Positions 60,332 to 64,000 of a stretch of DNA of 64,000 bases are shown here, in pieces; the first letter of the stretch is position 1, and each line of letters starts with the position of its first letter. Location: the NCBI GenBank assembly GCA_002269645.1, contig NIVC01000672.1, positions 248,001 through 312,000 on the forward strand, given 5' to 3'. The stretch comes from Macrostomum lignano. Lineage: Eukaryota. Below the pieces are notes generated by a model, which saw only the letters and a list, made by a program, of their open reading frames with translations, did no database searches and had not been told where the DNA came from. Both the position numbers and the translations under genes were made by a program.

Positions 60332-63300
60332 ATGACCGACATGGGAACCGAAAATGCAGAGACAGTCGGAGTTTCAATCAGCTTCAACTGCAGCGCTGCA
60401 GCCGGTGAGCGAATTGCATTGGCTGGAAACTGCCCAGAGCTCGGCAATAATCGGGTGATCCAGCAGGGGCATCTGAGAAACTTGAGAGACAGCATCTGGC
60501 AGAAAAAGGTCACCATCAACATGATAGAGACGGACGGTAATTTTAAAGTTCCGGACGGAGCGACTTTGACGGATCTTTCATTCAAGCTGAAGAAGACTGA
60601 TGGCACCGAGTTGCTTCCCGAAGACACAGAGCATTCTCTGAAGCTCAATTCGAACCTTGGCCGCTGGTTCGAAGTCGAGATCGTCAGAGGCGTCGAGCAC
60701 CAGCTGAGTCCAGTAGGCATGGAGCGCCATTTTAAGCGGCTCCCCGACATCAGTAAAGTTGAAGACGTCAAAGACCTGATTGAGAAATTCGAATGGAAAC
60801 GGAAAACTGAGCCGTGGCTCGAGACGGTGTACCTGGTTGCTTTGTCGTGTCTGCACACGCATCCTGATATGGCGGATCTGCCTCAAGCTCTGGAGCTTAT
60901 TGGTGAAGCTGAGCAGCTCGAGGGTTCCCCAGATCGGGTGAGCGCAAAGTACCTCATCAATACAGCGCGGCTGAAGCTGCGATCTCTTCAGTCCTGCGAC
61001 GGCTTCCCCAAGGATTGGCAAAGAGATGTGGAAGAGTTGGAGAGTCTGTGGAATCCAGCAGATGATGATGATTCCTCAGATGATTCCTCGGCATCTCGGC
61101 AGCTCAGCTCGGTGGGCTGGATTCTGCTGCGCTGCGGCTTCGGGAAACTGACTGAGGCTGAAGAGTATTTCACCGAAGCATCTGAAAAGGATTCAAGCAA
61201 TTTTTACGGGCTGTTTGGACTCGCCGTCACAAAGTCTCGAATTCGCAGGAGCAGAGACAACAGATGCGCCGCCGAAAAAGAAGAGCTGGATTTGTGGAAA
61301 GAAGCCGAAAAGATTTGCAGAGAGAGTCACAGGGACACTCTGCCTTTGCTTCTTGCCAGCTATGCTGAGGCAACTCTGAATTCTGACGGCCCAAGAGCCA
61401 AGGATTTGATAGCGGAGGCCTATGAGGATCTTAAAAACGAGCAGGAGAACAACTTATCAGCCCCAAAATGCCTCTCCGTGCTCGTGATTGTTTTGAGTGT
61501 GTGCAGAAAACTGTGCAAAAAATTGAAAGGGGAGGATAGAATGAAAACAGTAGAGATTTCAGCAAAGGTGTTTCGGCTCGCGTCAGAGCTTCTACAACAG
61601 AGTGGCTCTGACAAATGGTATGAAAGCCCCGACTTGCACCATCAAATGGCGCTTTACTTGTTGAAGCAAGAAAGAAATATCAAGGAAGCTCGAGAGCACT
61701 TTAAAAAAGCTGATCTCGACAACAACATTTGGGTGGCCAAATCGCTCATTGATTTGGATCAGAATCAAAGAGACTTAGATAAAGGCCAAGAGCGCAAATC
61801 AAAATATGATCACATCAAATGGATCTGCCAGCGCTACGATTCTCTCTGCCTAAGACCCAGAAGGGAAGCCCATAAAGCACACGTTGTGGCAGAGAAGGGC
61901 TATTTCCTGGCAGTTAATGGTCGCCTAGCTGAAGGTGCGCAGTGCATCGCATGGGCGCTGAATGAGTACGCTGGAGATGAGCCTCCCAATTGGCACAGTT
62001 GTGTCAGTGAGTATCAGAAAAATAAATTGAAAAAAAGCTGGCCCATAGCGAAAACGATGATGCAAGATTTATTCTTTCCTTCATCGATGAAAGGGACTCT
62101 GCTGCCGCCGTGAGAGAATGCTGCAGTGAAATCAAAGCGCAGCCAAATATTCATATTTCATTTGCGCGGCTCAGTGATCTGCTTAACAATTCAAAGCTGT
62201 TCCTTGAATTTCTGCGAGCTGTGGATGCCAAATTCCCTGCCGATTCCGTCCGGACTGCGCTAGAAAGTCAGCGGGACAGCTGGGCGACTGCAGCAATGCT
62301 CAAGTTCTATCGGGAATATCCAGAGAGTGACACTTTTACGGAGGACGAGCTCAGATATCTGCTGTCAAATCCTAAGCAAGTGCAGTTGAAAAGATTTATA
62401 AAACAACTCAACGGCAAGTTCAGGGCTACTTCCGTCTTGGCTGCGCTAAACCAGTGTCCAAAATGGGCGACTGCTGCTAAAGGAAAACTCCGTCAAAAAT
62501 ATCAGAATGCTGATCTTAAAATTGACGAACTTAAAGATCTGCTTTCAGCTTCAGATGAAAATATGTTAGCTAAATTTATAGCACAGATCGATAACAGAGG
62601 TATTCCTGCAAAAAATGTTATTGCTGAACTTCGTGAACAGCGGAAGAAACTGATTGAGGACTTACTTGCTGCCACAACAAATTTTCCGCATCAGTTGTGG
62701 ACTGAGCTTCAAGGAGTTCTGCATCTGGAGTTAGAGCAGTTCGATGCTGCAAAGGAGAAGTTCGAGCTGCTTGATTCGAAACTGCCGCACAGACGCGAGC
62801 TGATTGCCGACTCCATCATGAGCAAGCTGGAGCATCCTGAGACTCAATCTGAAGCCAAACGCGATGGTCTACTCGAGTGTCTCAGGCTGAAGTGCAAAGA
62901 TGCTGGCCAGCAAGTTTTGGAGTTTCTTCAGGGCCTGAGGAACGATCCTAAACTTCACCACAGGAATCAGTATGAGCTGGTTGCTCGGCTGCTGAACCTG
63001 CGGAAAAGCTCAACGTCCTTCTTCATCAAGAAAAGGTTGCTGTACAAAAAATTACAGAGTTCAGATGAGGAATTCGATCTAGCGATGCAGGACAGCTACG
63101 AAAAGGCAGTAAATGAAGCGGAAGTTAAATTCCGGGACGTTTGCCAGAAGGTAAAAGAGGAGTTCGATCTGAACCCGTATCCACGTCAAGCACTGCTCTC
63201 GGCCACTCGGAACCATCTCATAGCCGATCGCCAGCAAGAGAAGAAGTTCCTCAAGCAGACACTGGAGAACTCGCACAGGGCCCTGGACCACGCTTGGAAA

Positions 63301-64000
63301 AATTTCATTTATTCAGCTAAAAAATGTAGGCTTCCACGATATTTTCCTTTCGCTTACAAAAGAAGACAAGATGCTGATACTGGTGCTTTTATTAAGCCAA
63401 GAGACCAATTAAAACATTATAATCGAAATCCAAGCGAGCTCACAATTGAAAAAGTGACAGAATATTTTGAAAACAATTTTGAATCGACCGTCAATATGGA
63501 CCAGAAATTAATCGACTATTTTGTACGAAGAGAATTTAATATCCTAACAGAAGAGGGAGCGTGGATCATCCAATGGGTCAGTTCAGTGAATGAGGAGAAG
63601 CACAGGCTGCAAGTTAATATTGACGAACTTGAGCGAAGCGTGAACGAATTGCTTACTGCGACTGAAGCTCCGAAGAGTGTCTACGAACTGGCGCACAAAG
63701 CGACCGAGTTCGTTGAAGAGACCCGCCTAGTACTGCACCGGGAAAATGAGAATAGCGATGGAAGAAATCCCAACGGCTCACCAGGCGGAGGCGCTGGCCG
63801 CAGGCGCCGTGGAGGGAGTCACTCCATCCTACGAGGCGAAGACGCTGGCGAAAGTGACCTTGAAGGGAGTCATTTCGACCCACGAGGCGGAGGCGCTGAC
63901 GGCAGAGGCCGTGGAGGGAGTCACTTCGACCCACGAGGCGGAGGCGCTGGTGCCAGAGGGAGTCACTCCGTCCCACGAGGCGGAGGCGCTGGCGGCAGAG
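60332..64000 (+). CDS. Large intronless CBM20-like/TPR/HEPN-like/RGG protein (>1,200 aa, 3' end beyond window), with a 1-nt frameshift at A7 62030-62036
   Basis: ORF 60332-62113, plus a second frame open from 62026 to the window end that is absent from the ORF track because it has no stop. TPR-like helices: GKLTEAEEYFTEASEKDSSNFYGLFGLA, LHHQMALYLLKQERNIKEAREHFKKA, LQGVLHLELEQFDAAKEKFE. C-terminal ENSHRALDHAW...YFPF...NEEKHR module, then RGGGAG repeats. Confidence 0.8.

What the first reader, a model, noticed from the sequence alone, without database searches (positions are those of the whole stretch)
60332..64000. Candidate animal RNA-sensing nuclease: CBM20-like + TPR array + HEPN-like domain + RGG tail
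The frame missed by the ORF track (62026-64000) encodes LENSHRALDHAW (63262-63297), RYFPF (63337-63351), WIIQWVSSVNEEKHRL (63562-63609) and a closing helix VYELAHKATEFVEETRLVL. That order matches my recollection of a bacterial HEPN-like family (NLRSALD...FP...N-x-x-K-H-R) often found in defence contexts, with KHR as a variant of the R-x4-6-H RNase site. Upstream are multiple TPR helices (IFIT-like sensors use TPRs to bind RNA), and downstream are RGG/RG repeats typical of RNA binders. A TPR sensor fused to a HEPN-type RNase in an animal would parallel prokaryotic antiviral sensor-effectors; the functional reading is inference.
Basis: partly seen in the sequence, partly recalled or inferred. 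Interest (0 to 1): 0.85.

Follow-up and report, generated by a model that had tools for sequence, protein, structure and literature searches.

The report
Flatworm IFIT-like RNA-binding gene, not HEPN
This is one large gene of the flatworm Macrostomum lignano that joins a starch-binding-like domain, an IFIT-like repeat array, a conserved helical domain of unknown type and a long arginine-glycine tail; the proposed HEPN RNA-cutting domain finds no support.

Summary
The window is Macrostomum lignano contig NIVC01000672.1.

Both frames belong to one gene. A paralog (PAA70671.1) covers both halves in a single frame. The break fits one missing A in the A7 run at 62030-62036. The fused product is about 1,721 aa.

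- **N-terminal domain:** CBM20-like; Foldseek's top 17 hits are all CBM20.
- **Repeat array:** IFIT-like at family level; the profile's best PDB hit is IFIT5, E 1e-6.
- **C-terminal module:** about 266 aa, all helical.
- **Tail:** 581 aa, RGG/GRG-rich.

The HEPN reading is not supported:
- K-H is conserved, but the following R is not.
- No Rx4-6H motif is conserved.
- No HEPN profile matches in Pfam or PADLOC.
- A confident AlphaFold model (pLDDT 83) has no significant match in PDB or BFVD.
- No bacterial relatives were found; all 19 hits are M. lignano proteins or come from one unidentified eukaryote assembly.

Paralogs carry RRM, CCCH zinc-finger or RGG modules. The most likely role is therefore an RNA-binding, IFIT-like protein. 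What its conserved C-terminal module does is unknown.

The parts
58916..59219 (+). Conserved upstream block shared with the neighbouring CBM20-led gene. It is probably a promoter plus a non-coding first exon, with a splice-donor-like CTGC|GTAAGT (GT at 59093).
   Evidence: 78% identical over about 330 nt to 48829-49160, which lies upstream of ORF 49774-51447. The role as exon or promoter is inferred.
59218..60156 (.). 22-bp minisatellite (ATTCACTCACTGTGATATGGAG, about 43 copies). It lies between the upstream block and the coding exon, probably inside a 5' intron. A candidate acceptor ctctttcAG ends at 60176.
   Evidence: Tandem Repeats Finder; sequence read. The intron reading is inferred.
60332..62035 (+). 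Coding frame A (fused-protein aa 1-568). The literal ORF runs on to a stop at 62111-62113.
60359..60691 (+). CBM20-like beta-sandwich domain (aa ~10-120).
   Evidence: Pfam CBM_20 is sub-threshold (E 0.0085, 16.3 bits against a 23.3 cut-off). It is homologous to modules of the neighbouring ORF (E 1e-8) and of P0008, which passes the CBM_20 cut-off (37.8 bits). The AlphaFold model (pLDDT 64.8) has CBM20 domains as its top 17 Foldseek PDB hits (E 1.5e-4 to 1.6e-2; probability 0.97-1.00).
60719..62952 (+). IFIT-like TPR/helical-repeat region (aa ~130-874). It starts at MERHFKRLPD, which aligns with the IFIT signature LECHFTW of paralogs. It spans the frame break.
   Evidence: Family alignment. 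The family profile's best PDB hit is IFIT5 (E 1e-6), aligned from the CHFTW motif. Paralog P0004 on its own has IFIT5 and IFIT2 as its best PDB hits (E 7e-4 and 0.02-0.03), with one weak unrelated hit at E 0.14. Pfam TPR is significant in P0004 but sub-threshold in the target.
62030..62036 (+). A7 homopolymer where the reading frame shifts from frame A to frame B. One extra A (A8) would give an uninterrupted ORF reading ...KNKLKKKLAHSENDD...
   Evidence: Sequence. Under the A8 reading the segment HSCVSEYQKNKLKKKLAHSENDDA aligns without a gap to RGCLSPFKWRNLETLLGHKTAFEA in the paralog. Removing a 35-nt GT-AG intron aligns worse (score 268 against 241). The paralog gene is one continuous frame at this point.
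62038..64000 (+). Coding frame B, open from 62026. It continues beyond the window to a stop at window-equivalent 65494-65496. The GenBank model (P0001) starts at the internal ATG at 62296.
62194..62667 (+). Target-specific insertion of about 2.5 copies of a 60-aa helical module (FLRAVDAKF...WATAA...DELRYLLS / FIKQLNGKF...WATAA...DELKDLLS). It is absent from paralog P0024.
   Evidence: Repeat 1 against repeat 2 scores z = 14.8 and beat all 500 shuffles. The insertion is visible in the alignment to P0024.
62953..63750 (+). Conserved C-terminal all-helical module (aa 875-1140) that defines the family. Motifs: L..S[RH]..LD (63262-63297), Y[FY]P[FH]A[FY] (63340-63360), RRE (63523-63546), W...W....N..KH (63562-63603), AH.A.EF.E (63688-63720).
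   Evidence: Alignments A1, A2 and A4. W, W and E are invariant. R, E, N, K, H, A, H, A, E and F are at least 90% conserved. The AlphaFold model has pLDDT 83.2 and pTM 0.81, with 11 helices. No significant match in PDB, BFVD, PDB sequence profiles or Pfam.
63760..64000 (+). Start of the RGG/GRG low-complexity tail (17-aa units such as GGSHFDPRGGGAGGRGR). The tail is 581 aa in all and is cut by the window end.

Best explanation
The locus is one gene of Macrostomum lignano whose coding sequence lies on a single exon. It encodes a multidomain protein of about 1,721 aa. The N-terminal half is not annotated, because the reference sequence is one A short in a poly-A run (62030-62036), either through an assembly error or through a very recent frameshift.

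The protein belongs to a family so far seen only in M. lignano and one unidentified eukaryote assembly, and it is expanded there. It has four parts:
1. A CBM20-like beta-sandwich. This was probably recruited, together with its 5' leader, from the neighbouring gene family.
2. An IFIT-like TPR solenoid.
3. A conserved all-helical C-terminal module of about 266 aa, of no recognisable type.
4. An RGG/GRG tail of about 580 aa.

Inferred mechanism: the protein binds RNA. The IFIT-like solenoid provides a groove or clamp for RNA, as in IFIT1 and IFIT5. The RGG tail adds non-specific RNA affinity and a tendency to join RNA-protein granules. The C-terminal module is the family's constant output part. 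Its conserved R/E...N..KH...H...E..E residues suggest a ligand-binding, metal-binding or catalytic site, but it is not demonstrably HEPN.

Shown: gene identity and organism, domain order, homologies, motif conservation. Inferred: RNA binding, any immune role, any catalysis.
For: Organism and locus:
- The window is 100% identical over 11,705 nt to GCA_002269645.1 NIVC01000672.1.

One gene:
- Paralog P0024 (PAA70671.1, 1091 aa) aligns to both frames.
- Its gene is a single frame across the junction.
- The A8 reading aligns without a gap.
- The two halves share codon usage.

Domains:
- CBM20-like fold.
- IFIT-like repeats: family profile to IFIT5 at E 1e-6, anchored on LECHFTW; P0004 alone to IFIT5 at E 7e-4 and IFIT2 at 0.02; target aa 142-375 to P0007 at E 2.5e-8.
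- C-terminal module: family conservation and a confident model.
- RGG tail.

RNA link by domain association:
- P0007 has an RRM (Pfam 5.5e-9).
- P0017 and P0029 are named C3H1-type zinc-finger proteins by UniRef.
- P0004 has an RGRGG tail.

Family expansion:
- Several M. lignano loci and a tandem array in L001.
Against: - The target's own TPR region has only sub-threshold Pfam hits and no direct PDB hit. Its CHFTW motif has decayed to ERHFKRL. The IFIT link rests on paralogs and covers only the first ~170 residues.
- No RNA-binding or expression data exist here.
- RRM, CCCH and RGG accretions are circumstantial evidence.
- The frame break may be real. In that case the locus could be a young pseudogene or give two separate products.
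- GC3 is about 0.5, against 0.91 in the conserved Piezo gene of the same window. This is unexplained.
- The CBM20-like model is only moderately confident (pLDDT 64.8, six sequences).
Confidence: 0.6

Rival explanations
1. One reading: the C-terminal module is a HEPN-type, metal-independent RNase, which makes the protein a sensor-effector nuclease.
For: - The module is all helical and has strongly conserved His, Lys, Asn, Arg and Glu residues.
- The conserved H of AH.AAEFAE lies about five residues into the last helix, roughly where the HEPN histidine lies.
- The HEPN review notes families that keep H but lose R.
- The weak Foldseek hits include Csm6, a CARF-HEPN protein (E 1.6-2.1, TM 0.27).
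- Paralogs carry RNA-binding modules.
Against: - No Rx4-6H motif is conserved.
- The R after KH is unique to the target.
- The one Rx4H in the target (RDQLKH, 63400-63417) sits in a variable linker and is absent even from the closest paralog.
- No HEPN family appears in Pfam for any of 20 members, even at E up to 10. PADLOC and NCBIfam give none.
- No significant fold match in PDB or BFVD, despite pLDDT 83.
- No bacterial homologs were found.
Confidence: 0.08
2. The frame break is a real mutation. The locus is then a recently disabled pseudogene, or it is split into two products: a 593-aa CBM20-TPR protein, and the annotated 1001-aa protein that starts at the internal Met.
For: - The reference sequence shows A7, not A8.
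- GenBank annotates only the product that starts at 62296.
- ORF-A is not on record as a gene product.
- The family is large and redundant, so losing one copy is plausible.
Against: - Both frames stay open for 593 and 1156 codons, so any inactivation would be very recent.
- The break lies in a homopolymer. The assembly is largely PacBio-based (PMC5730564). That long-read assemblies are prone to homopolymer length errors is my own knowledge.
- The 330-bp 5' block shared with the neighbouring gene lies upstream of ORF-A, not of the internal Met. Read as a promoter or leader, which is itself an inference, it would place transcription upstream of ORF-A.
Confidence: 0.22
3. The two frames are joined in the mRNA or during translation: by a 35-nt mini-intron (GT 62003 ... 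AG 62037), by transcriptional slippage, or by -1 ribosomal frameshifting on the A run.
For: - A GT-AG pair 35 nt apart restores the frame, and that stretch is AT-rich.
- GAAAAAA-type runs are known slippage sites in some viruses (my own knowledge).
Against: - The paralog has no intron there.
- Removing the 35 nt deletes 12 residues that align well with the paralog.
- Average intron length in this genome is 1.1-1.4 kb (PMC5730564).
- The heptamer is not a canonical X XXY YYZ site in frame A.
Confidence: 0.05
4. Same protein, different biology. It is a scaffold of RNA-protein granules (for example germ-line or stem-cell granules) recruited through methylated GRG repeats, with no role in sensing foreign RNA.
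For: - The 581-aa tail has 50 GRG and 82 RG motifs. These are typical arginine-methylation and Tudor-binding substrates (established knowledge).
- No immune signalling domains are present (no Death, TIR, CARD or NACHT).
Against: - Most family members lack the RGG tail yet keep the IFIT-like and C-terminal modules. The tail is therefore an accessory, not the core function.
- Expansion, tandem arrays and fast divergence (46-50% identity to the nearest paralog) look more like a conflict-driven family.
Confidence: 0.2

Closest known systems
IFIT proteins (IFIT1/2/5, vertebrate interferon-induced TPR proteins that bind 5'-ppp or cap0 RNA)
   Same: The family's N-terminal region starts with the IFIT signature (LECHFTW) and aligns colinearly over about 170 residues to IFIT5, IFIT1 and IFIT2. 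The profile gives E 1e-6. A single paralog has IFITs as its three best PDB hits. Both are long all-helical TPR solenoids.
   Different: - Only the first subdomain is detectably similar.
- The target's own signature has decayed (ERHFKRL).
- The flatworm proteins are two to four times longer and carry a conserved C-terminal module that IFITs lack.
- They also carry variable RRM, CCCH, RGG and CBM20-like additions.
- No interferon system is known in flatworms (my own knowledge).
- RNA binding is untested.
HEPN superfamily, including the animal TPR-HEPN architectures (DZIP3/hRUL138, C6orf70) described in PMC3710099
   Same: An all-helical domain at the C-terminus of a TPR protein in an animal, with a conserved histidine in the last helix.
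   Different: No conserved Rx4-6H, no HEPN profile hit and no significant fold match. It is not filed as HEPN.
CBM20 starch-binding domains (GPCPD1/GDE5, STBD1, glucoamylase, CGTase)
   Same: The predicted fold matches CBM20 structures (probability 0.97-1.00, TM up to 0.71 normalised to the target). It has the G.C.ELGN and W...T motifs. Homolog P0008 passes the Pfam CBM_20 threshold.
   Different: The target is below the Pfam threshold. The Trp of the canonical LGNW motif is Asn (LGNN), and a second sugar-stacking Trp appears to be missing. That reading rests on my memory of the Aspergillus niger domain and was not tested. Glucan binding is therefore doubtful. CBM20 fused to an IFIT-like protein is, to my knowledge, undescribed.
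Uncharacterised M. lignano proteins PAA70671.1, PAA92423.1, PAA75149.1, A0A1I8FW97, A0A1I8GYW7
   Same: True homologs that share the IFIT-like region and the C-terminal module. The nearest, PAA70671.1, is 46-50% identical.
   Different: None of those compared has the CBM20-like N-terminus or the 60-aa repeat insertion. Only PAA92423.1 has an RGG-type tail.

Membership tests
HEPN superfamily | Conserved Rx4-6H catalytic motif at the start of the last core helix | tested here: not met
   Family alignments A1 and A2. K216-H217 and H248 are conserved, but no R lies 4-6 residues upstream of either. The R of 'KHR' occurs only in the target. The target's single Rx4H (63400-63417) lies in a variable linker.
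HEPN superfamily | Fold similarity to solved HEPN domains | tested here: not met
HEPN superfamily | Profile match to any curated HEPN family | tested here: not met
   Pfam on the target and on 20 family members at E up to 10; PADLOC; NCBIfam. No HEPN family was listed.
HEPN superfamily | Metal-independent RNase activity | not testable with these tools
   Needs biochemistry.
IFIT family | N-terminal CHFTW signature followed by the first IFIT TPR subdomain | tested here: met
   Met for the protein family. Profile A5 hits IFIT5 (3zgq) at E 1e-6 and IFIT1 at 0.014-0.16, aligned from LECHFTW. P0004 alone hits IFIT5 at 7e-4 and IFIT2 at 0.02. In the target the motif reads ERHFKRL, and the target alone has no IFIT hit.
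IFIT family | Full-length colinearity with IFIT, including the RNA 5'-end pocket residues | tested here: inconclusive
   Only about 170 N-terminal residues align significantly. Later matches are generic TPR. Pocket residues were not mapped.
IFIT family | Binding of 5'-ppp or unmethylated-cap RNA; induction by infection | not testable with these tools
   Needs experiments.
CBM20 | CBM20 beta-sandwich fold | tested here: met
   The top 17 Foldseek PDB hits are all CBM20 domains (E 1.5e-4 to 1.6e-2, probability 0.97-1.00). Model confidence is moderate (pLDDT 64.8).
CBM20 | Pfam CBM_20 score above the gathering cut-off | tested here: not met
   The target scores 16.3 bits against a 23.3 cut-off. 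The homologous module in P0008 scores 37.8 bits.
CBM20 | Aromatic sugar-binding residues | not tested
   By eye, LGNW reads LGNN in the target. The comparison rests on my memory of the Aspergillus niger domain.
TPR repeat proteins | Significant TPR profile matches | tested here: inconclusive
   The target has only sub-threshold hits (E 0.08-0.18). Paralog P0004 is significant (TPR_2 7.4e-10). The family profile hits consensus TPR proteins at E 6e-6.
RGG/RG-rich RNA-binding tails | Dense RGG/RG repeats in a Gly/Arg-rich disordered region | tested here: met
   581 aa, 40% Gly, 15.5% Arg, with 53 RGG, 82 RG and 50 GRG.

The most novel reading that the evidence does not exclude
The conserved C-terminal helical module (W...W....N..KH / AH.AAEFAE) is a previously unrecognised enzymatic effector domain, for example a new kind of nuclease or a metal-dependent RNA-modifying enzyme. 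Fused to an IFIT-like RNA sensor, it would give flatworms a single-chain sensor-effector against foreign RNA that evolved independently of interferon.
Probability: 0.12. Interest if true: 0.8.

Novelty: new variant of a known kind. Interest (0 to 1): 0.4.

Why it matters
IFITs are usually treated as a vertebrate, interferon-linked family (my own knowledge; the paper searches found no description of flatworm IFIT-like genes). This locus belongs to an expanded, fast-diverging family in M. lignano, a regenerating flatworm in which transgenesis has been established (PMC5730564). The family keeps the IFIT N-terminal signature but adds a constant C-terminal domain with no detectable sequence or fold relatives, plus interchangeable RNA-binding modules. 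If the family handles foreign or aberrant RNA, it would show how IFIT-type sensing is wired without interferon, and it would supply a new domain to characterise. On the practical side, the GenBank model for this gene lacks its N-terminal 655 residues and should be revised.

Tried and rejected
- **Word-indexed protein searches.** The merged protein, the TPR profile and the core-domain profile gave nothing or only 7 short fragments. The exhaustive HMMER search was what found the family.
- **35-nt intron.** Rejected as less likely than a 1-nt homopolymer deficit.
- **Bacterial defence families.** PADLOC and NCBIfam gave no hits.
- **PDB sequence searches.** Single-sequence and profile searches with the C-terminal module gave nothing below E 0.02.
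- **Foldseek against viral structures.** Nothing.
- **Rfam and tRNA scans of the window.** Nothing.
- **Prokaryotic promoter and terminator scan.** Uninformative for a eukaryote.
- **Direct-repeat finder on 42.7-64 kb.** Swamped by minisatellites; replaced by BLASTN.
- **RNase III-like, ferritin-like or hemerythrin-like reading of the H...E..E stripe.** Considered only by eye. There is no fold support, so it is not claimed.
- **Organism behind ENA assembly ERZ25074608.** Could not be identified.
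Full report
**Observation.**
The window holds a 593-codon ORF (60332-62113) and a second frame that is open from 62026 to the window end. Frames this long are not chance: by base composition, P is about 1e-14 and 3e-16. The two frames share codon usage (r = 0.80, against 0.14-0.24 for off-frame controls).

**Organism and locus.**
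- The window also carries a multi-exon Piezo gene (Pfam Piezo_THU9_anchor, 1.5e-51) and dense minisatellites.
- The exhaustive HMMER search returned a 1001-aa protein that is 100% identical to frame B.
- The record encoding that protein is Macrostomum lignano assembly GCA_002269645.1, contig NIVC01000672.1.
- Locus L003 is 100% identical to window 52296-64000 over 11,705 nt. The window is therefore NIVC01000672.1:248001-312000.
- In the record, frame B runs 1156 codons to a stop at window-equivalent 65494-65496.

**One gene, one missing base.**
- Paralog P0024 (PAA70671.1, 1091 aa, 46-50% identical) aligns to both frames.
- Its gene (L004 6001-9366) is a single uninterrupted frame across the homologous point.
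- The two frames can only be joined within 62026-62113.
- If the A7 run at 62030-62036 is read as A8, the joined segment HSCVSEYQKNKLKKKLAHSENDDA aligns without a gap to RGCLSPFKWRNLETLLGHKTAFEA in the paralog. Removing a possible 35-nt GT-AG intron (62003-62037) deletes 12 well-aligned residues and scores lower (268 against 241).
- The simplest reading is therefore a 1-nt homopolymer deficit. It is either an error of a largely PacBio-based assembly (PMC5730564) or a very recent mutation. The tools here cannot decide between these.
- GenBank annotates only the part that starts at the internal Met at 62296. ORF-A is not on record as a gene product.
- A 330-bp block upstream of ORF-A (58916-59219) is 78% identical to a block upstream of the neighbouring ORF 49774-51447. 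It includes a conserved CTGC|GTAAGT. I read it as a shared promoter or non-coding exon; that is inference.

**Architecture of the fused product (about 1,721 aa).**
1. *aa ~10-120, CBM20-like.* Pfam CBM_20 is sub-threshold. The domain is homologous to modules of the neighbouring ORF (E 1e-8) and of M. lignano PAA69187.1, which passes the CBM_20 cut-off. The AlphaFold model (pLDDT 64.8) has CBM20 domains as its top 17 PDB matches. Paralog P0024 lacks this module. It looks like a local accretion from the neighbouring gene family.
2. *aa ~130-874, helical repeats.* Long paralogs begin with LECHFTW/ECHFKW, which aligns to the target's MERHFKRLPD.
   - The family profile's best PDB hit is IFIT5 (E 1e-6), aligned from that signature over about 170 residues. 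IFIT1 and consensus TPR proteins follow.
   - Paralog P0004 on its own has IFIT5 (7e-4) and IFIT2 (0.02) as its best PDB hits.
   - The target's own TPR hits are sub-threshold.
   - The target carries a private insertion of about 2.5 copies of a 60-aa helical unit at 62194-62667 (z = 14.8).
3. *aa 875-1140, the family's conserved C-terminal module.*
4. *A 581-aa tail.* It is 40% Gly and 15.5% Arg, with 53 RGG and 50 GRG.

**The C-terminal module and the HEPN claim.**
- Alignments of 17-29 sequences show two invariant Trp and one invariant Glu. Another ten residues are at least 90% conserved: R, E, N, K, H (W...W....N..KH) and A, H, A, E, F (AH.AAEFAE).
- Upstream lie the conserved motifs L..S[RK]..LD and Y[YF]P[FH]A[FY].
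However, the R of 'KHR' is unique to the target.
- No Rx4-6H is conserved. The only Rx4H in the target (RDQLKH, 63400-63417) lies in a variable linker.
- No HEPN family appears in Pfam, PADLOC or NCBIfam for the target. Pfam also lists none for any of 20 members, even at E up to 10.
- AlphaFold with the family alignment gives a confident 11-helix model (pLDDT 83.2, pTM 0.81).
- Foldseek finds nothing significant in 350,542 PDB chains. The best E is 1.3. Csm6, the only HEPN-containing chain seen among the top 50 hits listed, is at E 1.6-2.1 with TM no higher than 0.27. BFVD also gives nothing.
- PDB sequence profiles give nothing.

**Phyletic range.**
The exhaustive search of 1.84 billion representatives gave 19 hits. 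They are M. lignano proteins or come from one unidentified eukaryotic assembly in ENA (ERZ25074608), where members lie in tandem near retroelements. No bacterial relatives were found at that sensitivity, so the recalled bacterial family is not confirmed. TPR-HEPN fusions are in any case already described in animals (DZIP3, C6orf70).

**Function (inferred).**
- Family members swap accessory modules. P0007 has an RRM (5.5e-9). P0017, P0029 and P0006 have C-terminal Cys-rich regions, and UniRef names P0017 and P0029 C3H1-type zinc-finger proteins. The target and P0004 have RGG tails.
- Together with the IFIT-like solenoid, this points to RNA binding.
- I commit to this reading: an IFIT-like RNA-binding protein whose solenoid engages RNA, whose RGG tail adds avidity and granule partitioning, and whose C-terminal module is the constant output part.
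- The conserved polar residues of that module suggest a binding or catalytic site.
- Expansion, tandem arrays and fast divergence fit a conflict-driven (antiviral or anti-transposon) role. A housekeeping RNA-granule role remains a live rival.

**Verdict.**
It is a new variant of a known kind, with a C-terminal domain that has no detectable relatives. Interest is moderate (0.4).

Noticed in passing
window 5354-27655 (+): A multi-exon Piezo mechanosensitive-channel gene (Pfam Piezo_THU9_anchor, Piezo_cap, Piezo_TM25-28). Its exons have GC3 of about 0.91, against about 0.5 for the target and its neighbour. Its introns are packed with 17-33 bp minisatellites.
   Followed up: partly
window 49774-51447 (+): A 557-aa ORF with two CBM20-like modules and a conserved C-terminal region of unknown function. 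It is a homolog of M. lignano PAA69187.1 (P0008). It shares the N-terminal module and the 330-bp upstream block (48829-49160) with the target gene.
   Followed up: partly
window 51627-54352: A 2.7-kb minisatellite with a 33-bp period (about 83 copies) directly after the neighbouring ORF. Short duplicated coding fragments (PNFYRW) flank it on both sides.
   Followed up: no
window 41154-42677 and 42986-46351; L003 13659-19857 (window-equivalent 65954-72152): An ankyrin-repeat ORF (507 aa) has a 62% identical paralog just beyond the window end. Several non-coding blocks are 76-92% identical between the two regions. This indicates segmental duplication around the CBM20-led genes.
   Followed up: partly
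L003 11603-13201 (window-equivalent 63898-65496): The GenBank protein model (P0001, 1001 aa) omits in-frame pieces of the RGG repeat relative to the genome ORF. This is probably repeat collapse in the transcript model.
   Followed up: partly
window 409-867 and 4315-4773: Identical 152-aa ORFs about 3.9 kb apart, each followed by a (CTGT)n array. A direct duplication at the start of the window.
   Followed up: no
window 57097-58584: A 1.5-kb (AGTT)n microsatellite, 96% pure.
   Followed up: no
L001 1-10291 (ENA ERZ25074608, ctg185430): In an unidentified eukaryote, at least four members or fragments of the same family lie in tandem on one strand within 10 kb, next to reverse-transcriptase genes.
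   Followed up: no
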